A stretch of 63,762 nucleotides of DNA, the filler included, from Dicyema japonicum (lineage: Eukaryota > Animalia > Dicyemida): assembly GCA_011109175.1 (NCBI GenBank). It is 4 parts of 4 records of this genome, joined end to end, with 100 filler letters (N's around TTAATTAATTAA, not from the genome) between each part and the next. Parts side by side here need not be neighbours in the genome. Positions count along the whole stretch, not along the records: positions 1 to 29,426 come from RDEW01000020.1; 3 more parts are not named here. One strand, 5' to 3'. Below the pieces are notes generated by a model. The model worked only from the letters and a program-made list of their open reading frames with translations. It ran no database searches and was not told the origin of the DNA. This document shows positions 2,000 through 29,426 of the stretch, one piece after another (positions within the stretch are counted from its first letter, which is position 1; every line of letters starts with the position of its first letter). Made by a program: the position numbers and the translations under genes.

Positions 2000-4155
2000 T
2001 TTGAATAATGAAATAAAAAGGTGGAGATCAAAGCACAAAAATCGATATGGAGAGCACTTTCATCTTTAAATGGAAATAGATCCACTGAAGAAGTTCGGAA
2101 TATTATTCGAGACGTCTTAAGAGAGGATAAAATATCATCTGGGGAGGATCACAGCCAAAAGGATTTGAATAATCTCATAAAATATTACGTAAAAATATCC
2201 CACAAGCACAATAAGTAATCAAATGTACCCCTTTAAATGGAAGATATGGACAAGTCTAAGCCACTATATAAAGTCAAAACCGCGATTTCTGTCGAATGGA
2301 GTTAGCCAAGGATCCCCATTATTATCAGTGCTTTTCAATTTGTACATAAATATACTCCTCACAGTGGATGGATTAATAAAAACCCTAAAAGGTTGAAGAC
2401 TCCATGCTAATATGTCGCCTGTCAATGCTGAACTTGCAAACTCAGCATTAATAATGATTGCGGGAGACCTAAACGCAATGTTGGGAACTCGGGTTACGCA
2501 AAAGTGGTAGTGAAAGGCATAACAGAAACCTGCAGGAGACCCTACTGGCGAACCTCTGTCGTGTAAACAACCTATTCCTCTGCAACATTGCGTTCACGCA
2601 TCTTGACAGACACAAAACAACGTGGTCAGGGTACATGGGAAAGCAGGACGGACAAATCATGAACATCTATAATCAGATTCATTACATAATCTGCAGGTAA
2701 AAAAACCGTGGATTTATGGAGGATCGATCATCGACAGTGACAAAACTCTCATTGAAGAAATACGGGTAATTGCTGAGAATGATTACTCAAAAAATTACAA
2801 TCTGCTGCGCCACCTGGCTAATATTAGAACAAAAATAAGAAAAGCCATACGTTTGAGAACAAAGAACAAAATAATCGATCAAGATGATTAAAAACCTCAA
2901 AAATAATTGAAAGCTCTAGGAGACCTTAGACAAATATAAGACTGAGTCCTGAAATAACCAGTAACTTTGCGGGATGACCAAGGGAGACAGATCATGGATC
3001 AACTGGAAATGGCAGAGTTTATTGCTGTTGTTCAAATTAAATGATTATTGGACTCCTCCAGAACTGGGTGAACTTGAAGAAGAAATAACCCCTCAAGAAG
3101 TACAAGTAGCAAGCTCAAAATTGAATAATGACAAGAGCCAAGGTTATCACAATGGCGAATTCTTCAAATATGGAACTAAAAATTGTATGAAAGCACCGCT
3201 CGTATCTTAAACAGAATGTACAGAACCGACAATTTGTCACAATTTATGGACATCCTAACGGATACGAACCAAGGAAACCTCCTCAAGACGATTAGATACG
3301 ACGGGAGGAAAAGTGACTCTTCAAAATTCGAGACAACGCGAAGAGATCCATTATTCCTTATTCTGTTTGTTATCTACTTTGAGACAGCCCCTCTGGATCT
3401 GGAGCCTCTCCTTGAAGGGAAACAAGAACAATAGCATACGCAGATGATGTGTACTTTGTTTAAATGATAAAGAGCACTTACTGCTTTATTGGAGCAAACT
3501 CCGGGGAAGTTGGTTAAATGGTTCCTAAAAGTAAAATCAGACAAAATTGAAGTCACGTAACTCGAAAGAGAGAAAGCGAAAAGATGATTGGCGTAAACCA
3601 AAAAGTTTGGCTCTTTTTTCGGAGACAGCAAAGACAAAAAATAAAAACAGTGGCAAATGCCGCACTATACACAATCAAGAAAATTTGGTTTTCCCGTAAA
3701 GGGCTCGATGTGGATACAAGAGTCCATTTGTACAACGCATAAATAAAATCTACAATCTTGTATAACGCGGGCACTTTGGATTACACAAAATAGAAACTTG
3801 AAAAGCTGAATTCCTTCCACAAAGACCAGCTTTGGCATACTCTTTTTTCGTGGAACGACTCAAGACTGCCATCGAGGAGCAAATCGATTTCGTGCGAGAT
3901 CCTGGGGAAAATATGGAGGTTGTATGAACATATAATTCGTCTGGACTAAGGGACCTCATCAAACATGGCTATGAAGGACTACCTTGTTCTAGAATCTCCG
4001 TGTTTCCTTGGTCGAACAAGAGCGGTCATACCGATAGTCCTTGATGAAGACCTTAAGGAAATCGGAGGACGCCTCAAGGACTTGAAGACCTCAACAGGTT
4101 GGAGTACATGGCAAAAAGTCGTCAGAGATGAAAGAAGTTTGTTTTTTCGTGTTTA
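2000..4155 (+). mobile_element. Decayed RTE-type LINE (APE + RT), many stops and frameshifts
   Basis: Fragments IMIAGDLNAMLG (APE), EITPQEVQVASSKLNNDKSQG, PLFLILFVIYFETA, IAYADDV, LYNA.IKSTILYNAGT and FLGRTRAVIPIVLDEDL; colinear with the better-preserved copy at 32617-33685. Confidence 0.75.
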
Positions 4156-6950: not shown

Positions 6951-7838
6951 TTATTTGAGGTCAAAATTCTATGTTGTCAAAATTATCTACGATTTTGAAA
7001 GGCCTTCAAGTTTAATTACAATTAAAATGTTTACTATTTTGTTAATGTATCCAACAAATAGTTAAAGGTCCTGTATATAGGAGATGATCACTCTAAACGT
7101 CACGCTCCACTCAAGTATATAAAAATCAATATTTTTAAATTAACATAAGATATTTTTGGGAACACGAGGAATCAGTCCCGAGTTTGATGTAAAATTGGTA
7201 GCCTTAAAAAATAAATACTATTCGCTTTATAAAGAACGTTGCCGTGTCCTTATCAATGTGATAATTATTAAATTTTAAGCCGGAAGTGTAATAACAGAGA
7301 ACAATTATCAGTGACGTCAGCAAAGATAATAATAGATTTATACAATTTGGAGATACAATCAATTTAATTCTACTATCCAATCATTCAAATGCTTAATAAT
7401 TCAAATTTAACTGATGATTCAAATTTGATTTGAGATATACCTTCAGGGTTTCACCATTTCCCGTATTGACGACGGTGAAAGAAAACCTACCCGAGAGACA
7501 ATATTTGACCTTTATATGGTAAAACCCAGTACTACAAAACTATTTAATCTTCCCCCATCAGTCCGATTCCTACCCAAAATGGGTACCCCAACCTGTAAGT
7601 CCGGGTTATACTTTCAGTTCAGAGTCCTCTTGATTTTTTTGAGAAATACAAACCAAAATGAATAGTTAGCAGAAAAATAAATCAAACGATAAATAGCGAA
7701 TATTTATATATTTAATATATTATTAAAAAAATAATAAAATTTAAATAATAAAAATAAAAGTTAAGTCCCACTACAATAATTTGAGGTTCTTTTGATAGAA
7801 TAGTTTCTATTTTAAAACTATCAATAAACTATCAATAG

Positions 7839-9312
7839 ATGTTCTGGACGCTCTCTCAAGTAAACGAGCTCAGAGACGAGAACACCATGGATGGAGACCA
7901 CATCACCTCATTGGAATACAGTCAAGACGGGAAAATGCTCGCTGTGGGCAACAAGAGAGGCCACATAGTTGTCTTCCACGAAACCAAGGGGGAGCAGGTT
8001 CAGTACTCCCTCTACAGTGGATTCCAAAGTCATGATAACGAGTTCGACTGTCTTAAAAGTGTCGTCATTGAGGCCAAGATTAATTCAATCTCATGGCTTC
8101 CCCAACCCAACAACTCCCGTTTTCTGCTTTCCACAAACGGTTTTCGGCTTGCTTATTTTCAGATAAATGCGTCAAGTTGTGGAAGATGAGCGAAAAAAAT
8201 GTGAAATCAATCGACGTTGACGAAATCCGTGAGGAAGGTTCCCTCAAGGTCCCCAGAATAAAGGTTGGGGAGAGAGTGATCGAGAACACTCCTAAACGGA
8301 CTTTCAGTGGTGCTCACGTGTTCCAAATTAACTCTCTGAGTGTAAACAGTGATATGGAGACGTTTCTGTCGGGTGATGATTTGAGAATAAACATATGGAA
8401 CATCGAATCATCAACACGTGCCTTTAGTACCCTTTATAATAATTCAAGATGTGGTAGACAGGAAGCCATATTTCGCAGAAAACGTCTCAGAGGTGATTAC
8501 GTGTTCAATGTTTCATCCAATTTTGTCGTATGCCTTCATTTATGGGAGTACAAAGGGACTACTACGATTGTGTGACATGAGACAGAATGCCCTGTGCGAT
8601 CAGCACTCAAAAAGTAGTGGGGTGAGTGAGTTTAGTGTACATGGACAACTCCCAACAGTACAAAGGGACTACTACGATTGTGTGACATGAGACAGAATGC
8701 CCTGTGCGATCAGCACTCAAAAAGTAGTGGGGTGAGTGAGTTTAGTGTACATGGACAACTCCCAACATAGACCGACGTCAATATATGACGAGATCACAGC
8801 AAGTGTGTCAGATATTAAGTTCAGTCGTTGTGGAAAGTATGTTATGTGTCGAGACTACTTGTCTCTGAAGGTGTGGGACTTGGCTATGGAGAGTAGACCT
8901 TTGGAAGTTTTCAAAATAAGCGACTCAATTCGTAACAAATTACACTTTCTGTACCAGAATGACTCAATTTATGACAAGTTTCAGATGGCTGTTAGTCATA
9001 ATGACAGGTACTCGACTCTGCTATTTTAGATGCCTTCTTACTGGGAGTTACAATAACTTTTTCAGGATTTATGATCGGAGGAATCAGAAGGACTATGTTT
9101 TGCAGGCTAAAATGAGTGGGCTTAAGGGGAAGAACTCTATGAAACCTAAATCTGGTAGTATGAGCTTCCGGAAGAAGAAGGAAGACTCGATGACCTTTGA
9201 TGGACCCATAAATGTGGATTGTAAGATATTACACTGTGCCTGGAATCCCACAGAAGAGTCGTTTGCGGTGACTTCTGGCCCGACCCTCTTTTTTTATCAA
9301 AATGTTAAATGA
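7839..9312 (+). CDS. PPP2R2: PP2A regulatory subunit B55 (WD40), divergent; four 22-23 nt introns; 110-nt tandem duplication at 8548-8767
   Basis: Spliced product WTLSQV...FQSHDNEFDCLKSVVIEAKIN...LLSTNDKCVKLWK...SGDDLRINIW...CRDYLSLKVWD...LYQNDSIYDKF...TGSYNNFFRIYD...KILHCAWNP matches B55/Cdc55 motifs. Confidence 0.92.
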
Positions 9313-13700: not shown

Positions 13701-14033
13701 ATAAAAGTAATAAACCTAAGTGGTTGTAAATAATTAAGTCAGCTGTCTGTTAAAATTGATTAGTTTTGTGTAAAAACATTCCATATGCTGTATAGAGTCT
13801 CTTATAATAGTACTTGAACACTAGCTAGATATGGATAATACAAATCCATCATTCTATTCAGAAGAAATAACTCTCTACGAATATATACGTAATTATTTAA
13901 CAATTTCCATGCTGTCGCTCGGGCAACTCAACTGGTTGTTTCATGACAGTCCGCATTGTCATGAATGGTGTATGAGATTAGCATTGATTATATACTTAAC
14001 TATATATTCACTACATATCGAATTACCGTGCTT

Positions 14034-14238
14034 ATGAATAATAAAGCTTCTAAAAAAGAGACTGTGGAATCTAATGTGCCACAAGTGATATCTCCACCCT
14101 CACGATTCGGTCGTCGAGACTGCATTCTGCCTTCTGAAATGAAACCATGCGTCCAAGTCCATAAAAAATTAAAAATGGCAAACAGGTTTGACTAATTAGT
14201 ACAAAAGGCATAACAAATTAGCGATTATTCAATATTAA
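14034..14238 (+). CDS. Putative ~60-aa micro-protein with a PKI-like pseudosubstrate motif (one 22-nt intron, 14186-14207)
   Basis: ATG 14034: MNNKASKKETVESNVPQVISPPSRFGRRDCILPSEMKPCVQVHKKLKMANR|HNKLAIIQY*; GT-AG mini-intron of typical size; no homology confirmed. Confidence 0.35.
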
Positions 14239-14360
14239 TTATAATTTGGCTAATTGGGACCGTTAAATCAATTTGGCTTTATATTTCCCTCTTTACTCTT
14301 AGAAACAAAAGGATTTCCCTAAAGAGTCAGTTTATTAGAGCTGTTTCCAAAACGAGTTTA

Positions 14361-17300
14361 ATGTATCAAAACAAAAATGAACAATTGAAAATTATACACA
14401 CCGCAAAACTACCACAAAGGAAGTACAAGTCTCTCTACATCTTCAGTGAAGACAACGTGTTCAGGAAATACACAAAAATGATCATAGACTGGGGATATCC
14501 TTTTTAAACATTATTAATCATTTTATAACATTTTCCTTAATTTTTACTCCATTCGAATACATGATCCTCCTCTCCATCATTGCAAACTGCGTTGTCCTTG
14601 CCCTTGATGAACATCTACCGGAGGGGGACACTACTTCTTTGTCTCTCAAGCTTGTTTTTACTTCATTTATATTTTAGGAACAAACTGAAAAGTTTTTCTT
14701 GGGTATTTTCTGTGCCGAAGCATTCCTCAAAATTATTACATTCGGATTTGTACTCCACCCGGGGGCTTATTTGAGGAATATTTGGAATATTATGGACTTT
14801 ATTGTCGTTGTGAGTGGGTACTCTACTGTTTAAGGATTACAGATTGATATCTCTGTTCGCATCCCCCGTGACTTTCGATTTACGAACATTGAGGGCAATA
14901 CGAGTGCTCCGTCCTCTAAAGTTAATATCAGGAATTCCAAGTCAGTTTACTAAAAACTCTTTAGGTCTTCAAGTGGTTCTGCAGTCCATAGTGAGAGCCA
15001 TGGCCCCTCTTCTTCAGATTGCTCTCCTTGTCTTGTTTGCCATCGTTATTTTTGCCATAATTGGACTCGAATTCTACAACGGAATATTCCACAGAACATG
15101 CTTCAAACAAAGTACCTACTATGCCTAACAAAGATGAAATATTTATCCCCCAGGGAGAAATGAATCCTGTCACGTGTCTTTCAGAGGGATTGAGTGGGGG
15201 TTATACCTGTCCAGTCAACACCACGTGTCGTGAATATTATATTGGACCGAATTATGGAATTACCAGCTTCGACAATATAGGATTCGCAATGTTGACTGTT
15301 TTTCAGTGTATAACTATGGAAGGATGGACCACTCTGATGTACCATGTTTGAAGGGAGATCTCACTTTTAGACCAACGATGCTCTAGGAAGTCTATTCAAT
15401 TGGCTCTATTTTATTCCTTTAATAATTATCGGATCCTTTTTCATGCTGAATCTTGTTCTTGGTGTACTAAGCGGGTAAATTACGTTAACATGGAGTAAAG
15501 TGAGTTCGCCAAGGAAAGAATTCGTGTAGAAAATAGAAGATCTTTTTTTAATTTACGAAAAAACCAGCAGATGGAACAAGAATCGGCTGCCTATATCGAG
15601 TGGTTGTTTAAAGCAGGTTTTCGTCATCTCTGATTGTTAGAGGAAGTCGAATTGGAACAGATAAGATCATTTCCAAACGGTGGTAATAATTGTAATATTT
15701 GTTCAGTGAGGGTGGACTGGAATGAAATCTTTAATATCGCCAAAAAACGAGGACTAATTGGAATTAAAGGTTTACTTTGTAGGTAATTGTAGCAAAGAGT
15801 AAGTTCTGGGAATTAGAGAAAACCCTAAGGTGAATATAAAATTTATTAAAGGATAAATATTCGTAAAATTGTGAAAAGTCAATTTGCTTATTGGACTGTC
15901 ATTGTGTTGGTCTTTCTCAACACAATTTGTATATCCTTAGAGCATTATAACCAGCCTGACTGGCTCACTGAATTTCTTGGTTGTTTTGTTGTAATGTTTG
16001 AGTATTTTCTGAACTTACCTTCTTGGGTTTGTTTATTCTGGAAATGGTCCTCAAAATGTATGGATTGGGGTTCAAATTATACTTTGCCAGTTCATTTAAT
16101 ATATTCGACTGTGTGGTACTTTGTGTATACAACCGAGGTTATATTCTGTGGAATATTTGAAATTATATATTCGTCTTTTTACCCAGAGACCTCACTGGGA
16201 GTCTCGGTTCTGCGGGCTCTTCGACTTCTTAGGATATTTAAAGTTACCAGGTATGATTGATCAAATTACTTTAAGGTATTGGGCGTCTCTAAGAAATCTG
16301 GTGGTTTCTCTCTTAAGCAGTATGCACTCTATTCTCAGTCTTCTATTTCTCATATTCCTATTTATCGTGATCTTCTCTCTTCTAGGAATGCAAATATTTG
16401 GAGGAAGGCATAGTTGTTACTTTATTGTAGTTGGAACTTTGATGATGAGAAACCTTATTCCAATTTTGATTCATTTTTCATGGCTGTTCTCACTGTTTTC
16501 CAAGTTGTGTTTTTTAATCATAAAGATAATAACGGGGGAGGACTGGAATGAGGTTATGTACAACGGAATCAGATCTCAGGGAGGATCAGGAGGTTCTGGC
16601 ATGCTATATTCCCTCTATTTTATAATCCTCGTGGTTATTGGCAACTGTACAGATTATTGTTCACCACAGATGCACTACTCAATGTCTTTTTGGCTATAGC
16701 AGTGGACAATTTGGCCAATGCACAAGAGTTGACTGCCGCCCAAGAAGAGGAGGAGGTAAAAAAAGATGAGGTGTCAGTTATATACAAATTTAAAGGCGAG
16801 AAATGACATCAAATATATGTTTTCCGAAAAAATAGACCAAGAGGTAGTCGGAGATATTTTTAGTATCAGAATAAGACTGAGGAGCAAAGAGCCTTTGATA
16901 ACATAGGCCAAGAGGAGGAAGTCACAGGGACAGGATTTCAACCAAAGCCAATGTTGCCATATAGCTCATTTTTCATATTCAGTTCTACAAATCCGTATTT
17001 TTGATAAATATGTAAGAATTCGTTTGTTTTGTCACAATGTGGTGAATCTGAAATACTTTGATCTGTTCATAATGATAACGATTATTGTAAGCAGCATTTC
17101 ATTGGCCACTGAGGATCCAGTAAATCCGAATTCAATGCAAAATCAGATCCTAAACTATTTTGATTTCATTTTCACTGGTATTTTCGCTGTAGAAATGGTT
17201 TTTAAGGTTTTTTGTACAATCATGTTAGATTATTGACCTTGGAGTAATCCTTCACCCTGAATCGTATTTCAGAGATCTCTGGAATATCCTTGACTCGATA

Positions 17301-20129
17301 GTCGTGGTTTGTGCCCTCATCTCATATCCTTTAAAGTTTGTGAGTGACTCTACTTTAGAAATTTAGACAAAGGCGCTAAGAATCTCAACACGATTAAAGC
17401 ATTGAGAGTATTCCGTGTCCTCAGACCACTCAAGACTATCAACAGAATTCCAAAACTGAAAGTAAAGACTTTTATGAATTTAAGGCTGTTTTTGATTGTG
17501 TTGTTAATTCACTTAAAAATGTATTAAATATTCTGCTTGTTTATACGCTCTTCCAATTCATTTTCTCTGTGATTGCTGTTCAACTTTTTAAAGGCAAGTT
17601 TTTCCACTGTACTGACCCTTTGATGAGGACGCCTGACTTGTGCAAGTTTGAGAGTGTGCTTGATGGTTTAGGGGACAGTTTGTCGTCTATGATGATATTG
17701 GTAATCCTGTTTCAGTGGAAAACAGAGAATGGAAGAATCACCAGTTCAACTATGACAATGCTATTGACGCGTTCCTAACATTATTCACAGTTACAACGGG
17801 GGATGGATGGCCTCAGTAATATTGAACTTATTTTTGAGGATTCTCCAAATGTCAATGGACTCAACCTTCGAGAATCTTGGCCCTTCTATGTTGTACCGCA
17901 AGGAAATGGCCATTTTCTATATTGTCTTTTTTATAATATTTCCATTCTTTTTTGTGAACATTTTCGTGGCCCTAATCATAATTACATTCCAAGAACAGGG
18001 GGACAGTGAATTAGCTGATACAGAAATAGATAAGAATCAGGTATCCCTTAATATTAAAACATGTAGAAACAATGCATGGAATTTGTGATATCTGCTAAGC
18101 CTTTAAGTCGATTCCGTCCCCCAGTGACCTCCTTTCGGTACAAAATATGGAGAATAGTGGTTTCCCCAATATTCGAATATTTCATTATGGTGATGATAGC
18201 CATAAACACAGTAACCCTCATGATGAGAGTTTAAATTGCCATTACATTAAGATTTATGTAACCAATCCAACAGCAAAGACCACCCTATATGAGAACATTT
18301 TAATATACTTTAATACAGTCATATCAGTCATGTTCACTGTTGAGTCTCTACTCAAAATGATTGCTTTTGGCTTTAGAGTTTGGTGGGTTTATAGTTTAGA
18401 ATTACTTTCGTGATAAATGGAATCTATTCGATTTTATAACCGTTCTAGGCAGCATCACTGATGTGGTGGTGTCTGAAATAAATAATGTGGATTATATGCT
18501 TATTGATAGACTGAGTTTATCAATTTAGGTTTTCTCCGTCTCTTTCGTGCTGCCAGACTAATAAAACTTCTTCGTCAAGGTTATACCATCCGTATTCTCA
18601 TTTGGACGTTTGTTCAATCATTTAAGGTTGGTCTTACAATCACATTTACAGGCTCTCCCATATGTCTGTCTTTTGATTGCAATGCTCTTCTTTATTTACG
18701 CTATTATTGGAATGCAGGCATATTTCGTGCTTATTTAGCTTTTTGGCAACATTGAACTCAACTCGATGACTGAAATTAACAGACACAACAATTTTAGAAC
18801 CTTTTCTCAGTCATTGATTCTCCTGTTTAGGTGATGTAGTATTTAATACAAGATGTGCCACAGGAGAAAGCTGGCAGCTAGTAATGGTTTCCTGTTTGGC
18901 TGGAAGTAATTGTGATCCCAATGCTGGGGGTAAAGGAGAGTGTGGAGGTACTGTCGCATATTTTTACTTCACTTCTTTCATGTTCCTCTGTTCGTTTCTT
19001 GTCACATTATAAATTTATTCATAGATGCTTAATTTATTCGTGGCTGTCATTATGGATAATTTCGATTATTTGACACGTGACTCGTCCATACTTGGTCCTC
19101 ATCATCTCGATGAGTACATCCGGGTGTGGGGAGACTTTGACCCTGACGCCACGTGTATAATATATTTACGTTTAGAGGAAAACTCCACCACTCCAAACTA
19201 TACGAACTGTTAAGGAATATGGAACCCCCACTCGGATTCGGGAAAAAATGTCCCAATAGAGTGGGCTATTTGGTTGAATTTCATAATTATCCGTAGAAAC
19301 TGATTCGAATGAATATGCCCGTGGCTGAAGACGGAACTGTGGCTTTCACAACTACTTTATTTGCACTAATAAGGGAGTCTTTGGAAATAAAAGTGGATAA
19401 AGGTTTGATTAATCGCTTTCTCAGAAAATCTAATGGAAAACAAAGACGAGGAATTGAGAGCAGTTCTGAAGAAAATGAGGGGAGTTCAGTCAAAAAAATT
19501 ACTAAATTTACTGGTTCCCCCACATAGTGGTATTTAAGTTACAAATATTTTAGAGATCTGTGCGGGTAAAATGACTGTAGGAAAGATATTTGCCTTATTT
19601 TTGATGGCAGAGAATCGAGTCATACGGAAAATGAAAGAGAGGGATATTATTCAGGTAAATATTATTATAATATTAGAATGTGAGTAACGATAATGTAAAA
19701 TTCATAAATTTACATTAAGATGAATTCTCAGTGGATATTTAGGAAGATATACAACAGAATGAGTAACCAAAAACAAAACTCGATATCCTCGTATTCTAGA
19801 AAAAGCGAGTATTTTTTATTCTAATACAGAAATATATTAGTCAATACTCCCACTGGTAGTTTTCTGTCCACGGTCTCTATTTTTTTGTAAAATAGGAGCC
19901 AATTATGAGTTTTGTGAAAACTGCCTCTCAGAAACTAAGTAACCGTTTGATTGCCTCATAATTTACAGAGAAAGAAAAGGAAGAGATTAAACGTTCTAAA
20001 AGAGCCCTTCCTACAATTAAGGATATAAAGAGAAGACCGAGCAAAAGGAGAAAACTACCACCAATTCCAAACAAAATCATCATAGAAGGAAATGAAACAT
20101 CAACTGATCATCTACAGTGGGAAATATAA
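14361..20129 (+). CDS. Cav2: Voltage-gated calcium channel alpha1 subunit, Cav2 type; at least 38 introns; start codon and distal C-terminal exons uncertain
   Basis: Continuous spliced frame: [142 protein letters not shown]; Cav2-diagnostic wording throughout. Confidence 0.95.
14495..14547 (+). other. U12-type (minor spliceosome) AT-AC intron, 53 nt
   Basis: 5' ATATCCTTTT, branch site TTTTCCTTAAT (14531-14541), 3' TTTTTAC; removal restores IIDW-G(GG|T)-PFEY; no GT-AG solution is apparent. Confidence 0.9.
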
Positions 20130-21699: not shown

Positions 21700-22900
21700 T
21701 GATTATCCCTAGCTATCTTGAGCAGCTTCCAGAGATGCCTCCACACTATAGGAAAAGGACATCCCCAAGATTTTCAGTTTTTTAGTGAAAGTATTTTTGT
21801 CTGGTTGATAAATATATCCACGGTCATTTGTCCAAGTCGTTTGTCTGAGGTAAATATGGACGAAGATGATTTTTCAGTAGATATATCTTGGCCAAATTTG
21901 AATTTTGTGAAGGTATTCTTGTAGTCTTTCTGATGCCTTTGGGAGATCTTGATCGCGGGATCTGACTAATAGGTCATCAGCATACGATAGGAGGAAATCG
22001 TCTTTATTATCGGGTTATGGTAAATCGGACGAGTTAGATAAGACGGATGACAAAGGGGAACCTTGGGTAGTAATATTGAAACTGATTTGGTCCCATCCAT
22101 GTATATCTGGGCCTTTCTTCCGTTGATAAAGTTAGCAAGCCAGAGTTTTATATTGGAATCGACGGAGAGGCCGAACAATTTCCGGGTTAGGATTTTCCTG
22201 GTTGCATAGTCGAAAGCCTTTTGTAAATCGACAAAGCAAACAACGGTTTTGAGGTGACGATGATTTGTGTTTGAGCCTTCAAGGATAAATTGGTTGATGG
22301 CAGTGAGGTGGGTAGAGGTTTAATAACCCATCCATGTCATGAAGATGTAAAAGGGAGGGACGGGGTTATAAGATTAAGTATTAGTTTTTCCAACAATTTT
22401 GAGTGCATAGTAAAGAGATTTTTCTAAATGATGCAGGATTGTCCTTAGGCTTCCCAGGGTTAAGGATTGGGAGTATATAGGACAGTTTCCAGATAGTTGG
22501 ATTTGTATTCATGTTTATTGAATAGTTGAAAATCACCGTGATTGCATCAATCGTAAAATATCAGGTATAATCAGGTCACGTGGATGAGAAGAATTCATTC
22601 TCTTCAAACCCTCACTGACATCTGAATGTGAGATAAAGCTGATCGGCTGAGTTCTCTCCGGTCTGAAGGAGGATAACAAAGGCCCATCCATTTTCCTGAA
22701 AGTTTTGTGGTTTAAACTGGCGTAATATTTCATAAGTTTGTTAATACTTCTATATCGTCGTTGAGAATTATTATAATCCTGTTCAGCCGAAGTAGATTGA
22801 GAAAGGGAAGTTGTCCGAAGAGTCCTTCTTCGGATGGGTGATAGCTAATGATACTTTTTTGCGTGCATCCTAAGCGCCTCCAGAACATTCACAATTGGTA
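21700..22900 (-). mobile_element. Decayed LINE RT
   Basis: Minus strand FVDLQKAFDYATRKILTRKLFGLSVDSNIKLWLANFINGRKAQIYMDG (RT motifs), disrupted by stops. Confidence 0.6.
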
Positions 22901-22974
22901 GACCACATGGCGCCAAGTTATTAAAAAAATTAAATTAAAATTAATTCCAAAGAACACTGTTAAACAAAAAAACT

Positions 22975-23830
22975 AAACTAAGTGATCCCGACAAATTGGA
23001 TCAAGGCTCTCATCTGTGCTCGGTGTTGATCTTTTGAGCCTACACAAGTTCGTTGCGGGCGAGCACTTTCTTTTTGGCATTGGTGTCCATTTTTGTTTTT
23101 TTGATTAGTGTCTCCATGGGCGTCGGTGCTTTGATGTTTTCCTCTGTATACCATCTCTCAGTTAGTTTGAAGGCCCTTTTCTGGGTTGTGGAGATTTTCT
23201 GGATGTTCGTATAAGAGGCCAGTGGTCCCCATGAAGTACACGGATATGAAATGTATGGTTCGATGTACTGTGAGTAGAGCTTTTTAAGTATAGGGTGATG
23301 TCCAATTTTCCATAGACCTGTTGGGCAATTCAGAGATTTTCTTCTCACATTTGTTCAGCACGTTAGTGACGTGTCTCGTAAAGTTCATGTGCGTATCGAA
23401 AGTCAGACCCAATATTTTTTGCCATTTGCTGAACGGCAATGCTCTTCACTCCCCAGTATCTTCTATTGTCCTGTTCGACAATCTTTTGTCCGAGGTATAG
23501 AGAGTTGTAACAGGTTTTTCGGTATTGACATCCGATTTCATTAAACCACTCGATAGTCGATCCATGTGGTGTTGTATTCTTTTCGTGGCTGTTTGGGTGT
23601 TGTAACAGGTTTTTCGGTATTGACATCCGATTTCATTAAACCACTCGATAGTCGATCCATGTGGTGTTGTATTCTTTTCGTGGCTGTTTGGGTGTTCTGA
23701 TCGCGTGATACTAAGACGATATCGTCTGCATAAGCCAAAAGCAGGTCGTCATCTCCATTCAACGTCGGAATGTCAGCTGTAAATAGGTTAAATAGGAATG
23801 GTGGTAGCGGCGAACCCTGGGGTACTCCAT
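22975..23830 (-). mobile_element. 5'-truncated LINE (RT C-terminus and 3' end), Jockey/I-like
   Basis: GVPQGSPLPPFLFNLFTADIP, LLAYADDIVL, LYSQYIEPYISYPCTSWG; 3' end GGATCACTTAGTTTAG near 22975. Confidence 0.75.
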
Positions 23831-25026
23831 TTGGGAATATACGGGAGACAGAATGAATGTTTTCAATTCACACTCTACCTCTCCGTCCACTAAGGAAGTT
23901 AACTAAAATTCTAAGTTATTGAAAAGCTCATTAGAAAAATAAATTAATTTATCAACAATTTAATTGGTCTAAATAAGTGATCTATGAAGTGTTCATACTA
24001 GTCTTTTCTTGTGTTTATACTACTCTTTTTCCTGTAGCTAGTTTTGGAGTCCTATATTAATCTCCACAACGGGGAAGGTTTCTTCTCGTATCTAGGACAG
24101 ACTTCTAGATATAGTGGATGTTAAGGAGACTTAGCTATTTTGAGAAAGGCCCGTTGGTGTTCCGTAGGGAATTCCATGATTGGGGAGAAGTTTATTATTC
24201 ATTGTAATGCTGATATATGTGTCTTTATCGACTATCTCAATAATATTCTGATACATCATTTTTATAACATTTCCATTTTTCTTTTTGCCGATAGTGATTG
24301 GGGGAAATCCATGCAGCACTAGCTTACTTGATAATCGGTAGACCAAATTGTTTGTATAGAAGCTTAAATGACGGAAGGGAAGATACCGGGAAATGGGTAA
24401 AAGCCTTGAGAATGCAAATTTTCTTTTGGATCCTAGAGGTTACAATCCATCGGCGGCACATGAACGCGAATTCCACAAGGAAAGGATGTCTTCCGCACAT
24501 GTTCGGGAATGAAAAAGTCATATTGTGAATTAGCATTGATCAGTATAGGTGACCAACTAATCAATACGTAATGATTGATATATTTGCGGTTTTAGCAAAT
24601 AATCAATACATAATGAGTGATATATTTGTTAACGAGTTTCACTGAATTTATTAGTAGGTGTACTACACCGTCCTCATCTTCGAGATTTGTTTTGTTCCGT
24701 TTCATAATCTTCGATATCATATATGACCTTAGCGTGGCGTTATGTGGTTCTCCTAATTTGACTGTGCCCAGTGATAGTGGGCATGAATAAGAACCATTCT
24801 CTCCTCCTTATTCCGACATCGTTGCATGCGGTGGTTCTAATTTTCTCCTGGGCTGTTGGCGATCTTATTTTATTTATTATTAAATATTTCATCATTTTAA
24901 AACAACAATTTCTAATTTAAAATTCAAATAAAATTAGCGGATTTAAATTTTATAAGTATGTGGTATCTTATTATTTTGCTTTCAACTAAATATTATTCTT
25001 AGAATGAAAAAAATATACTGACTGGA

Positions 25027-26958
25027 ATGTCCTATATAGAACCTTCTATTCAACTAAACAACGACTCCTCGTCCTCAACGGAAGACAACAAGACCCCCAT
25101 GTAATTATTTAGTCATAACCTTATAGCTATAAAAACACTACCAATGACGAAAATCTTATCGATATTAAGTTGTCTAGTCCAATGGAGTTTGGTGGGTTTC
25201 TTTACTCTGGAGTATCCTCAGACAAATTGGAACAACGGGGGAATGCCAGTATCCCCCTAGGCTATTTGGGATCTATTGAACTTGATGTAAACCTTTCCCT
25301 TTCCATGAAGGCCATTCTGTTTACATTCAGTCGAAAGAAAATACAAGAAAATATTACTTTGGTGCTATACAACAACGGGTTGGCAATCCAGTCTTCAGCT
25401 GGATCCACTCTGGCAGTCTATCCAGCCAGTTCATTGATTCTTTTCGCCTACTTTGGAATACAGGTCCGTCATCTGGTTCTAGTAGTCATTCACAGAGAAA
25501 ACAACACCAAAAAGTGTATGAGTCACCTCCTCTTTGACGAATACGACCCACAGAACCCTATTCCTGTTGTCAACTCCCCTATATTTTACACAATTTCCGA
25601 TCTTTTTTCCTTACCTAACGAAGAGACATCCAAAATGAACAAGTTTTTCAAGAAAATGGGGTTCATTTTGGGTAGTCCCCGTCATTGTACTTTTTATGAC
25701 TCCTGTACCCCTTCAATTACATCAACATCCTGTTTATCAGAGTCATCTCCTATATCCGAGTTCTATAAACGAATGACAACCTCATTGTTACAACCAATTA
25801 GGACGGGGGTAAGGTTTCCAATAATTCGTAATCACGTGGCTGAGAGAGGGATACAACTACTGGATAATGGACTAAAGACTAATGCATCATCATGCTACTC
25901 AGGATCAATGGTTAGTCACTTATTATGTCTACATTATTATAATATTACATAATCACTTGGTTACACTTTGGTTAGTTATATTACTATATTCTCTAAATTG
26001 AGTTGATTTATAAATATACTGGTTATGTGCCTGTTATTGCTCCTACTCACCCAAATTATTATATTAAAAGTGAAACATTCATTATATTCTTGCTTTTTAT
26101 TGAGTAAAATATTATATTGATGTGCACAAATATCCCTGCTTGAATGTAATAAAAATGTCTGTTATAAATGGGAGTGACATGAATGATATATTACTGTTGG
26201 ATTGTATTCCTTATGCATTGTAACTACTGACAATCATTGTTGTTTATCGCTTTACTGTGCCGTATATAAACTGCTGTAATATGCATCGTAGATGGGTATT
26301 AGGCTTATTAATCAAATATTTTACTCTGTTAAGGTTGGATGTGTTCTTTTTTTACTACAATATGGCTTAATGCTGTAGGACTATAATCAGGACACTCATG
26401 TGGAGGTTACTTTCCCGGATTTGATGACTGTACTTCAGGATTCGGCCATGTATAAACTGTTTGAGGAGTTTTGTGTCGGGGAGTTTAGTCAAGAGAACGT
26501 TAAGTTTTGGAAGAGGGTTGAGAAATACCGTAAAATAAACAATCCGGACAAAGTTTGGACTATTCTAACATTCAGAGACACTTTGAGGCGCTGACTATAT
26601 ACAAAAAATTTATACAATCAGATTGCCGATATGATCTTAACTTGCTGCCCTCAACAACCAAGGAAATTTGTGAGGGACTGTGTACTTGTACTCCCACTCT
26701 ATTTGACAAGGCTCAAAGAGAGGTATTACTTGAGGGAAACTCAGATTTACACGTTGATGAACGACGACACTTTCGAACGGTTTAGAGTGTCCAACTACGC
26801 GGAGACTGTATTCTCTATAGAAAAGAGACGGAAGAAAGTGCAGACTATGTCATCTGTAGTTGATGTAATGAGTTGTAGAAGCAAGGAATTAAGACAAAGT
26901 GGAAGCTTCTGTATTCTCCTGCTAAGCTCTCTAATTCACTCCCACGATCATTTAAATG
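25027..26958 (+). CDS. RGS12: RGS12/loco-like protein: PTB domain + RGS domain; 3' end uncertain
   Basis: GYLGSIEL...VYPASSLILFA (RGS12-type PTB); LQDSAMYKLFEEFCVGEFSQENVKFW...IYKKFI...FDKAQREIYTLMNDDTFERF (RGS); introns of 22-29 nt plus one of 468 nt (25911-26378); no RBD or GoLoco seen. Confidence 0.78.
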
Positions 26959-26980
26959 ATATATTTATTATAATAAATTG

Positions 26981-27173
26981 TTATCTCTCTGTTATTTTCT
27001 TTAATAAGGCCGGGTCCTTTATTCCCCGTAGTGTTTCCTTTTCACGTCTTTTCTTGGCTGCTTCTATCAATTTTTGTCGTTTTTCTTCCTTTGGTTTAGT
27101 TACATTGTACTTTTGATTCTGTTATGATTGGTTCGTGAGAGTTGTTCATTGGACAACACATTAAAGACCCCAT
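26981..27173 (-). CDS. SVIP: Small VCP/p97-interacting protein, 56 aa, one 22-nt intron (27089-27110)
   Basis: MGSLMCCP...ESK|EEKRQKLIEAAKKRREKETLRGIKDP: MG + Cys acylation signal and the SVIP VIM-like EEKR.KL.EAA..R...RGI.D motif; absent from the ORF track. Confidence 0.8.
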
Positions 27174-28499: not shown

Positions 28500-29089
<590 letters not shown>

Positions 29090-29426
29090 TATGTCCTTTA
29101 ATCCCCAATTAACTTATTCGCTATAAATTTAATTCTTTATTACTTTATAATGAGGAATATCGCAAAATGAGGGTTATTCGTCAAGTTCTGGTGGGACATA
29201 TGAGTGCTGCTTATTGATATTAGTTGAAATGACCGAGAACATGATTTTACATAACATAAGACCTTAATAGGTCTTACTAATTTAAAGACCAAGGATCACA
29301 TTTAAATTAAGAAAAAACAAGGTAATTATGTGAGGTGAACGACTATCAAACTTATGGAAAGCAAATGGGTTCCCGAGAAAAACAACTAGCAAAGAAGGGA
29401 TGGTTGTTGAGAGAATCAGGAATCAT

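What the first reader, a model, noticed from the sequence alone, without database searches (positions are those of the whole stretch)
17790..17815. Cav2 channel with an EEDE selectivity filter
Seen: pore loops TMEGW (I), TGEDW (II), TTGDGW (III; GAT at 17802-17804) and TGESW (IV). Established: Cav1/Cav2 use EEEE and Cav3 uses EEDD; the domain III carboxylate strongly affects Ca2+ affinity and block. All other sequence is Cav2-like. Inference: a natural intermediate filter with altered Ca2+/Ba2+/Na+ selectivity, of extra interest if the host lacks neurons and muscle as dicyemids do.
Basis: partly seen in the sequence, partly recalled or inferred. Interest (0 to 1): 0.72.

Follow-up and report, generated by a model that had tools for sequence, protein, structure and literature searches.

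The report
Dicyemid Cav2 channel with EEDE filter
A parasite that has no nerves or muscles (a dicyemid, almost certainly Dicyema japonicum) carries an intact, selection-constrained Cav2-type calcium channel gene in which one of the four pore glutamates, identical in every other Cav2 channel examined, is an aspartate, a change that weakened calcium binding about 50-fold when engineered into a mammalian channel.

Summary
Codon GAT at 17802-17804 encodes Asp in the domain III pore loop ([10 protein letters not shown]). The other three loops read TMEGW, TGEDW and TGESW, so the filter is EEDE.

- **Gene:** + strand, about 14361-19654 or later. My model has 37 exons and 36 introns of 20-53 nt, and is open for at least 1474 aa.
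- **Codon support:** Logan contigs of four DNA runs (one sample) differ from the window at 40 listed sites but not at this codon.
- **Selection:** of those differences, 28 are synonymous and 2 non-synonymous (pN/pS about 0.02), so the gene is under strong purifying selection.
- **Orthology:** a tree places it inside spiralian Cav2. Two Cav1-like paralogues in the same genome keep Glu at this site.
- **Rarity:** all 225 long Cav2 proteins fetched have Glu in domain III, as do all 250 domain III loop contexts including fragments. Published reviews state that EEEE is universal in Cav1/Cav2.
- **Function (inferred only):** the same E-to-D change in Cav1.2 slowed Ca2+ entry 55-fold and raised the Cd2+ K'd from 0.4 to 50 uM.
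- **Caveats:** the dicyemid also departs at 12 other otherwise invariant columns, so near-neutral drift is a live rival. No RNA data were found.

Verdict: a new variant of a known kind, of moderate interest.

The parts
14361..19654 (+). Cav2-type alpha1 subunit gene as modelled: 37 exons, 36 introns, at least 1474 aa without a stop. Both ends are uncertain. ATG 14361 is the first in-frame Met. The 3' end lies beyond 19654, perhaps after a 22-nt intron with a stop at about 19716.
   Evidence: tblastn of fetched Cav2 proteins against the window, plus a splice dynamic programme with manual fixes. 28 of 30 coding differences from the read contigs are synonymous in this frame.
17802..17804 (+). GAT = Asp958 of the model, the domain III selectivity-filter position (Glu in other Cav1/Cav2).
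17672..17815 (+). Exon 24: domain III S5-P loop and pore helix (GQFVVYDD...[13 protein letters not shown]).
   Evidence: Flanked by introns of 26 and 23 nt, which leave no room for an alternative exon.
17839..18040 (+). Exon 25: rest of the domain III P loop and IIIS6 ([12 protein letters not shown]...[22 protein letters not shown]), the Cav2-type S6.
   Evidence: Cav2.1/2.2/2.3 score 84/81/76 bits, every Cav1 59 or less; the full-length hits identified among the best 150 are Cav2.
15319..15321 (+). Domain I filter Glu (GAA) in CITMEGW.
16538..16540 (+). Domain II filter Glu (GAG) in IITGEDW.
18866..18868 (+). Domain IV filter Glu (GAA) in CATGESW.
15502..15615 (+). Exon 8 with the alpha-interaction domain for Cav-beta ([19 protein letters not shown]). 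Tyr and Trp are kept. Gly to Ala, Ile to Leu and Leu to Ser depart from the consensus.
   Evidence: column counts in 214 Cav2; GY-WI motif per PMC7939481
19556..19654 (+). Exon 37 with a diverged IQ-like segment ([21 protein letters not shown]).
   Evidence: aligned to the IQ region of the reference Cav2 proteins
14495..14547 (+). U12-type AT-AC intron (53 nt; 5' ATATCCTT, TTCCTTAAT 9 nt before the 3' AC). It is the only intron in the model that does not start with GT or GC.
   Evidence: There is no AG in the interval. Removing it restores [13 protein letters not shown] as in the reference IIEWGPFEYMVLL. U12 and U6atac snRNA genes are in the genome.

Best explanation
Shown: the window carries the single Cav2 orthologue found in a dicyemid genome (statistics match Dicyema japonicum). 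The modelled ORF is open across four 6-TM domains with S4 Arg/Lys ladders, an AID, an EF-hand/pre-IQ/IQ region and very short linkers, and it is under strong purifying selection. Its domain III filter residue is Asp in both the assembly and the diverged sequence in the read contigs. Every other Cav2 examined, and the two Cav1-like paralogues of the same genome, have Glu. Inferred: the protein assembles with the Cav-beta that the genome also encodes and works as a high-voltage-activated cation channel in non-neuronal cells. The obvious candidates are the ciliated peripheral cells or cells of the infusoriform larva. The shorter Asp side chain at the position that matters most in the EEEE ring should lower divalent binding affinity by one to two orders of magnitude. 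That predicts weaker Ca2+ and Cd2+ block of monovalent current, lower unitary Ba2+/Ca2+ conductance and faster gating. The channel would still conduct Ca2+ but pass relatively more Na+ than an EEEE channel.
For: Sequence and alignment to solved Cav2 structures. Codon unchanged in contigs of four DNA runs that differ at 40 listed sites. 28 synonymous against 2 non-synonymous differences, both non-synonymous ones in the II-III linker, pN/pS 0.02. Open model of at least 1474 aa with 36 introns of 20-53 nt. 58-60% identity over about 1450 aa to Cav2 of many phyla. Tree: inside the spiralian Cav2 clade (SH-aLRT 99), far from the two Cav1-like paralogues. Paralogues read TTFEGWPG in domain III. Survey: 225 of 225 long Cav2 proteins have Glu in domain III, and 250 of 250 loop contexts including fragments. 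Literature: EEEE 'present in all Cav1/Cav2 channels' (PMC4436565); 'complete conservation' in Cav2 (PMC7939481). EIIID in Cav1.2: Ca2+ on-rate 55-fold slower, Cd2+ K'd against Li+ current 0.4 to 50 uM, gBa 33 to 18 pS, gLi 33 to 45 pS, the strongest of the four E-to-D mutants (PMC2230626). Cav-beta gene in the genome.
Against: No RNA evidence: no RNA run holding the stretch was found, so expression, splicing and the gene's ends are unverified. No electrophysiology exists for this protein. The functional prediction is carried over from a mammalian Cav1.2 background, and in Cav3 the same locus does not by itself set selectivity. The dicyemid branch is about three times the median length and departs at 13 of 382 invariant Cav2 columns, so this may be one tolerated conservative change among several. 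The read runs may come from the sample used for the assembly. Only the best 120 hits of each of two region searches, each with about 4100 hits, could be inspected.
Confidence: 0.65

Rival explanations
1. The substitution is real but functionally almost neutral. It would be a conservative Glu-to-Asp change fixed by drift in a fast-evolving parasite with a small population, with permeation essentially unchanged because the rest of the pore and the high external Ca2+ compensate.
For: The dicyemid departs at 13 of 382 columns invariant in 214 Cav2 proteins, most of them conservative changes (I/V, I/L, S/A, F/Y). Its end branch is 0.73 against a median of 0.23. In Cav3 the filter locus is not the sole determinant of selectivity (PMC4436565).
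Against: In Cav1.2 the same single change has the largest effect of the four E-to-D mutants. The site is Glu in 225 of 225 Cav2 proteins across phyla, including other long-branch parasites such as flatworms, nematodes and a nematomorph. The gene as a whole is tightly constrained (pN/pS 0.02).
Confidence: 0.3
2. Sequencing or assembly error, or a rare allele captured by the assembly.
For: Published heterozygosity of the assembly is 1.24% (PMC6736024). Contigs drop rare variants.
Against: Four runs at word depth 22-370 give contigs that differ from the window at 40 listed sites but not at this codon. Two neighbouring synonymous sites (17777, 17792) do differ, so both diverged sequences carry GAT.
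Confidence: 0.02
3. A decaying or non-functional gene copy in an animal that no longer needs a presynaptic channel.
For: Dicyemids lack neurons and muscles. N-terminus, linkers and C-terminus are much shortened. The AID and IQ are partly diverged.
Against: No stop or frameshift across the 37 modelled exons. 28 synonymous against 2 non-synonymous differences. 58-60% identity to distant Cav2 proteins. A Cav-beta gene is retained.
Confidence: 0.02
4. Not a Cav2 orthologue: a host (octopus) contaminant, or a divergent Cav1- or Cav3-like paralogue.
For: Some exons score about equally against vertebrate Cav1 and Cav2 structures.
Against: Introns of 20-28 nt are typical of the dicyemid genome and not of a cephalopod. 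Octopus Cav2 (P0294) has Glu and sits with molluscs. The IIIS6, IV-pore and proximal C-terminal exons favour Cav2. The tree places the gene in Cav2. Domain IV is Glu and an AID is present, unlike Cav3.
Confidence: 0.01

Closest known systems
Invertebrate Cav2 channels (cacophony, UNC-2, Lymnaea LCav2, Trichoplax TCav2)
   Same: Four-domain architecture, Cav2-type IIIS6 and IVS6/proximal C-terminus, AID, EF-hand/pre-IQ/IQ, G before the domain III filter residue (TGxGWP). 58-60% identity; nested among spiralian Cav2 in the tree.
   Different: Asp instead of Glu in domain III. Very short N-terminus, I-II and II-III linkers and C-terminus (about 1480 aa against 1900-2700). AID motif reads AY-WL instead of GY-WI. 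The host animal has no neurons.
Engineered EIIID mutant of Cav1.2 (Ellinor 1995 as cited; Cibulsky and Sather 2000, PMC2230626)
   Same: Exactly the same filter configuration (EEDE) in a high-voltage-activated channel.
   Different: Artificial, in a mammalian L-type background. The dicyemid channel is a natural Cav2 whose other pore residues evolved together with the change.
Cav3 (T-type) channels, EEDD, and the Cav3.1 domain IV D-to-E mutant, also written EEDE (Talavera 2001/2003, PMC2217349)
   Same: Asp in domain III. The mutant has the same four-letter filter.
   Different: Cav3 has a gating brake instead of an AID, is low-voltage activated, and matches this gene's domain III exon at only 31-35 bits against 52-58 for Cav2. 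No orthology.
Oyster (Ostreidae) Cav2 proteins with TGADW in domain II (EAEE), seen here
   Same: Another natural departure from EEEE in a Cav2 orthologue of a spiralian.
   Different: A different domain and a loss of charge rather than a shortened side chain. Found in eight database proteins, at least six of them from named oyster species. Not examined further.

Membership tests
Cav2 (CACNA1A/B/E, cacophony, UNC-2 orthology group) | Groups with Cav2 rather than Cav1 or Cav3 by sequence and tree | tested here: met
   Full-length hits identified among the best 150 of 1.84 billion representatives are Cav2. IIIS6 exon scores 76-84 bits to Cav2 structures against 59 or less to Cav1. In the tree it lies inside spiralian Cav2, SH-aLRT 99. 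Caveat: the only Cav1 sequences in the tree were the two rough models from the same genome.
Cav2 (CACNA1A/B/E, cacophony, UNC-2 orthology group) | Four homologous 6-TM domains with S4 Arg/Lys ladders | tested here: met
   Model; S4 motifs located at residues 140, 513, 838 and 1163.
Cav2 (CACNA1A/B/E, cacophony, UNC-2 orthology group) | EEEE selectivity filter | tested here: not met
   E271, E600, D958, E1251. This is the finding. Membership rests on orthology, so I file it as a Cav2 orthologue with a variant filter.
Cav2 (CACNA1A/B/E, cacophony, UNC-2 orthology group) | AID in the I-II linker with the GY-WI motif for Cav-beta | tested here: inconclusive
   Tyr345 and Trp348 are kept. Gly344 is Ala (Gly in 203 of 210) and Ile349 is Leu (Ile in 205 of 209). 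A Cav-beta gene exists on C223. Binding was not tested.
Cav2 (CACNA1A/B/E, cacophony, UNC-2 orthology group) | C-terminal EF-hand, pre-IQ and IQ region | tested here: inconclusive
   The proximal C-terminus is strongly conserved (69-73 bits to Cav2 structures). The IQ-like segment is present but diverged, and the end of the gene is not defined.
Cav2 (CACNA1A/B/E, cacophony, UNC-2 orthology group) | High-voltage-activated, Ca2+-selective current | not testable with these tools
   Needs expression and electrophysiology.
Cav3 (T-type) | EEDD filter, a gating brake instead of an AID, closest similarity to Cav3 | tested here: not met
   Domain IV is Glu and an AID is present. The domain III exon scores 31-35 bits to Cav3 structures against 52-58 to Cav2.
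Cav1 (L-type) | Domain III TFEGWP, IIIS6 FFM(M/V)NIF(V/I)GFVIVTFQ, post-IVS6 [10 protein letters not shown](D/E)EF | tested here: not met
   The window gene has [24 protein letters not shown] and [13 protein letters not shown]. The paralogues on C350 and C201 carry the Cav1 forms.

The most novel reading that the evidence does not exclude
Dicyemids have re-tuned their only Cav2 channel into a low-affinity, mixed Na+/Ca2+ high-voltage-activated channel for non-neuronal excitability, for example control of ciliary beating or larval behaviour. It would be the first natural HVA calcium channel with a weakened EEEE locus, and a natural experiment on what the domain III glutamate is for.
Probability: 0.25. 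Interest if true: 0.65.

Novelty: new variant of a known kind. Interest (0 to 1): 0.45.

Why it matters
The EEEE ring is the textbook basis of calcium selectivity, and reviews describe it as invariant in all animal Cav1 and Cav2 channels. A natural, selection-maintained exception, at the one position where mutagenesis shows the largest effect, offers a ready-made test of how much of selectivity resides in that ring and how much in the surrounding pore. It occurs in an animal with about 30 cells and no synapses, so it also bears on what 'presynaptic' channels do outside nervous systems. The same survey turned up a second apparent exception (oyster EAEE), which suggests the rule deserves a systematic re-check.

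Tried and rejected
- **RNA evidence:** the one run search found only DNA-like runs of one sample. Laid contigs showed no splice joints, so splicing and expression could not be checked.
- **Other dicyemids:** the IIIS6 exon searched among fragment-sized proteins gave nothing above 79% identity. The idea was to read the codon from out-of-frame ORF fragments of relatives, and no such fragments were found. A 67-aa query sees only proteins of 37-117 aa, so this is no evidence of absence.
- **Exon-row profile:** aligning all exons as separate rows to a full-length Cav2, to build a dicyemid-weighted profile, failed because MAFFT misplaced most fragments. It was not used.
- **Cav-beta N-terminal Pfam family (PF12052):** no match, but it matched no control genome either, so this is uninformative. 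Cav-beta was found instead through the guanylate-kinase family and a PDB search.
- **alpha2delta:** only sub-threshold VWA_N matches of 29 and 26 bits. Left open.
- **First tree run:** the mixture-model run did not finish. The tree reported is LG+G4 'quick' with SH-aLRT only.
- **Automatic splice model:** it needed manual correction at five places.
- **Alternative exon:** an alternative domain III exon encoding Glu is excluded, because the flanking introns are 26 and 23 nt and no second copy matched.
- **RNA editing:** considered and rejected on general knowledge. A-to-I editing of GAT cannot give a Glu codon.

Full report
**What is at the coordinates**

The + strand at 17790-17816 reads GTT ACA ACG GGG GAT GGA TGG CCT CAG, that is V T T G D G W P Q. 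The last codon is split by a 23-nt intron (17816-17838). The reading frame then continues as [16 protein letters not shown]...[22 protein letters not shown]. phmmer of the exon against all PDB chains aligns the stretch to the domain III pore loop of human Cav2.3, Cav2.1 and Cav2.2 (57.9, 52.7 and 52.0 bits). The Asp lies opposite the Glu of TGEGWP(Q). Cav1 chains follow at 42-49 bits and Cav3 at 31-35 bits.

**The gene**

I built a splice model from tblastn of fetched full-length Cav2 proteins against the window, followed by a splice-aware dynamic programme and manual correction at five places.

- The model runs from ATG 14361 to at least 19654, with 37 exons and at least 1474 codons without a stop.
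- Of its 36 introns, 35 are 20-28 nt long. Two of them have GC-AG ends.
- The remaining intron is a 53-nt U12-type AT-AC intron (14495-14547). It starts ATATCCTT and has TTCCTTAAT 9 nt before the terminal AC. The genome encodes U12 and U6atac snRNAs (85 and 37 bits, both above Rfam's gathering scores), which supports that reading.
- The four filter codons are GAA 15319-15321 (TMEGW), GAG 16538-16540 (TGEDW), GAT 17802-17804 (TGDGW) and GAA 18866-18868 (TGESW). The filter is therefore EEDE.
- The introns flanking the domain III pore exon are 26 and 23 nt, so there is no room for an alternative exon encoding Glu.
- The 5' and 3' ends of the gene are not fixed, because no RNA evidence was available.

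The joined translation was used only inside local scripts, for alignment to fetched proteins, the tree and the classification of differences.

**Is the codon real, and is the gene alive?**

The single run search found four runs of one sample and one study, kept as Logan contigs, and no RNA run. Laid on 14000-19900, these contigs are collinear with the genome, introns included. They differ from the window at 40 listed sites and one 2-nt deletion, which lies inside an intron.

- Positions 17777 and 17792 differ. Positions 17802-17804 do not.
- In my frame, 28 of the differences are synonymous and 2 are non-synonymous. Both non-synonymous ones fall in the poorly conserved II-III linker. Seven are intronic and 3 lie upstream.
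- pS is 0.029, pN is 0.0006 and pN/pS is about 0.02.
- This validates the frame of nearly every exon. It also shows strong purifying selection and shows that both diverged sequences carry Asp.
- The runs may come from the sample that gave the assembly, whose published heterozygosity is 1.24%. They exclude an assembly slip, but they are not a fully independent replicate.

**Whose genome it is**

The window is C101:976027-1005508 of an assembly of 67,542,437 bases in 377 contigs. The Dicyema japonicum paper reports 67.5 Mb in 377 scaffolds and extremely short introns (PMC6736024). That paper never mentions channels. A second paper notes that voltage-gated calcium channels exist in Dicyema sp. 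but does not describe their pores (PMC6543705).

**Orthology**

- The joined model is 58-60% identical over about 1450 residues to Cav2 of bees, a nematomorph, flatworms, chelicerates and hemichordates.
- The IIIS6 exon scores 76-84 bits against Cav2.1/2.2/2.3 structures and 59 or less against every Cav1. The domain IV pore and proximal C-terminal exons also rank Cav2 first. Two other exons do not discriminate between Cav1 and Cav2.
- The same genome holds two further HVA genes, on C350 and C201. They carry Cav1 hallmarks: domain III TTFEGWPG, IIIS6 [29 protein letters not shown] and an L-type IQ. They keep Glu in domain III.
- In a maximum-likelihood tree (38 rows, 1404 columns, LG+G4, SH-aLRT) the window protein lies inside Cav2. 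It sits in the clade of flatworms, molluscs, annelids, nemerteans and a bryozoan (support 99). The two paralogues sit across a branch of about 2 changes per column.
- Its end branch (0.73) is about three times the median (0.23).
- The tree lacks Cav1 and Cav3 sequences from other animals and used the simpler model, because the mixture-model run did not finish.

**How unusual the Asp is**

Two region-restricted searches, with a hemichordate and a flatworm Cav2 as queries, each matched about 4100 proteins and listed the best 120. Together with earlier hits this gave 225 proteins over 1000 aa. They come from vertebrates, cephalochordates, echinoderms, hemichordates, acoels, arthropods, tardigrades, nematodes, a nematomorph, many flatworms, molluscs including octopus, annelids, nemerteans and a bryozoan.

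- All 225 have Glu in domain III.
- Counting fragments as well, 250 of 250 domain III loop contexts have Glu.
- The only other filter variant seen is TGADW (EAEE) in eight proteins, at least six of them from oysters.
- Published reviews say the same about EEEE. [quoted passage not shown] Cav2 pore loops show 'complete conservation' of EEEE (PMC7939481).
- EEDE is mentioned only for non-animal four-domain channels (PMC6259924) and for an engineered Cav3.1 mutant (PMC2217349).

There is a caution. In an alignment with 214 Cav2 proteins, the dicyemid departs at 13 of 382 columns that are at least 99.5% invariant, mostly conservatively. A change at one of four ordinary invariant sites would not be very improbable (about 13%).

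**How it most likely works**

What follows is inference. The protein has all the parts of an HVA channel.

- The AID keeps the Tyr and Trp that contact Cav-beta, although Gly to Ala and Ile to Leu depart from the GY-WI motif.
- The genome encodes a clear Cav-beta on C223 (86-96 bits to beta1-4 structures).
- Only sub-threshold alpha2delta-like matches were seen.

The exact EEDE configuration has been made in Cav1.2 (PMC2230626). EIIID slowed the on-rate of Ca2+ block of Li+ current 55-fold (8.8e6 against 4.8e8 per M per s) with an unchanged off-rate. The rate constants imply an apparent Kd of about 0.5 mM instead of about 7 uM. The Cd2+ K'd rose from 0.4 to 50 uM against Li+ current and from 73 to 375 uM against Ba2+ current. 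Unitary Ba2+ conductance fell from 33 to 18 pS, and Li+ conductance rose from 33 to 45 pS. EIIID was the strongest of the four E-to-D mutants.

If that transfers to this protein, the dicyemid channel still conducts Ca2+ in sea-water-like fluid. It would bind Ca2+ far less tightly and let relatively more Na+ through. Whether it transfers is open. In Cav3 channels the filter locus alone does not set selectivity. The pore of this channel has also had time to adapt around the change.

**Rivals**

- Near-neutral drift is the serious rival (about 0.3).
- Error, pseudogene, contaminant and mis-assigned family are each at or below 0.02, for the reasons given in the Rival explanations section.

**Verdict**

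The identity is confirmed: a Cav2 orthologue of a dicyemid. The rarity of the variant is supported as far as the visible sample goes. The functional consequence is plausible, is backed by direct mutagenesis in a related channel, and is untested here. It is a new variant of a known kind and of moderate interest.

Noticed in passing
window 14495-14547: A 53-nt U12-type AT-AC intron (ATATCCTT...TTCCTTAAT...AC) in a genome whose other introns in this gene are 20-28 nt. U12 snRNA (G000:C79:163471-163599, 85 bits) and U6atac (G000:C35:237761-237858, 37 bits) are present. The Cav1-like paralogues have no intron at this place.
   Followed up: partly
window 16408-16430 and 18718-18738: Two GC-AG introns (23 and 21 nt) are needed to keep the conserved frame (IFGG|SWNFDD and IIGMQ|LFGNIE). 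No GT donor fits.
   Followed up: partly
window 14361-19654 (introns against synonymous sites): Between the window and the read contigs, the tiny introns differ at 7 of 872 bases (0.8%) while synonymous sites differ at 28 of about 950 (2.9%). This hints that ultra-short introns are more constrained than silent codon positions. The numbers are small.
   Followed up: no
proteins P0095, P0171, P0172, P0177, P0190, P0191, P0193, P0230: Cav2 proteins read TGADW instead of TGEDW in domain II (filter EAEE). The other bivalves fetched have EEEE. No paper in the library mentions this. Not checked against genomic exons or alternative splicing.
   Followed up: partly
L013 (G000:C350:71000-80500) and L014 (G000:C201:804500-814000, minus strand): Two Cav1-like (L-type) alpha1 genes with EEEE-type loops, so the dicyemid keeps both Cav1 and Cav2 lineages. 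My models of them are rough.
   Followed up: partly
L015 (G000:C376:31000-40500, minus strand): A partial near-copy of the C201 Cav1-like gene (domains I-II only in the stretch fetched) with an internal repeat of the IIS3-S4 segment. It could be a haplotig, a duplication or an assembly artefact.
   Followed up: no
L016 (G000:C355:123000-132500), e.g. 3488-3865: A Nav-family four-domain channel gene: 118 bits to Nav1.6 against 40 or less to Cav structures. It reads LTLDYWE in domain I, FRIMCGEWVEPLWDCM in domain II and SSASGW in domain IV. An earlier paper found no Nav signature in Dicyema sp. The domain III loop was not located.
   Followed up: partly
L023 (G000:C223:81209-84445), 1218-1776: A Cav-beta subunit gene (guanylate-kinase domain, 86-96 bits to beta1-beta4 structures).
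   Followed up: partly
G000:C242:976-1134 and G000:C318:376647-376781: Weak, sub-threshold VWA_N matches (29 and 26 bits; cut-off 34.7) that might belong to an alpha2delta subunit.
   Followed up: no
window about 7800-9310 (+), 26380-27110 (+), 28780-29090 (+), and 21700-24000 (-): By eye only, untested: open frames that look like a WD-repeat PP2A B-type subunit, an RGS-domain protein and a KLF-like C2H2 zinc-finger protein, plus reverse-transcriptase-like frames (YADD motifs) of retroelements downstream of the channel gene.
   Followed up: no
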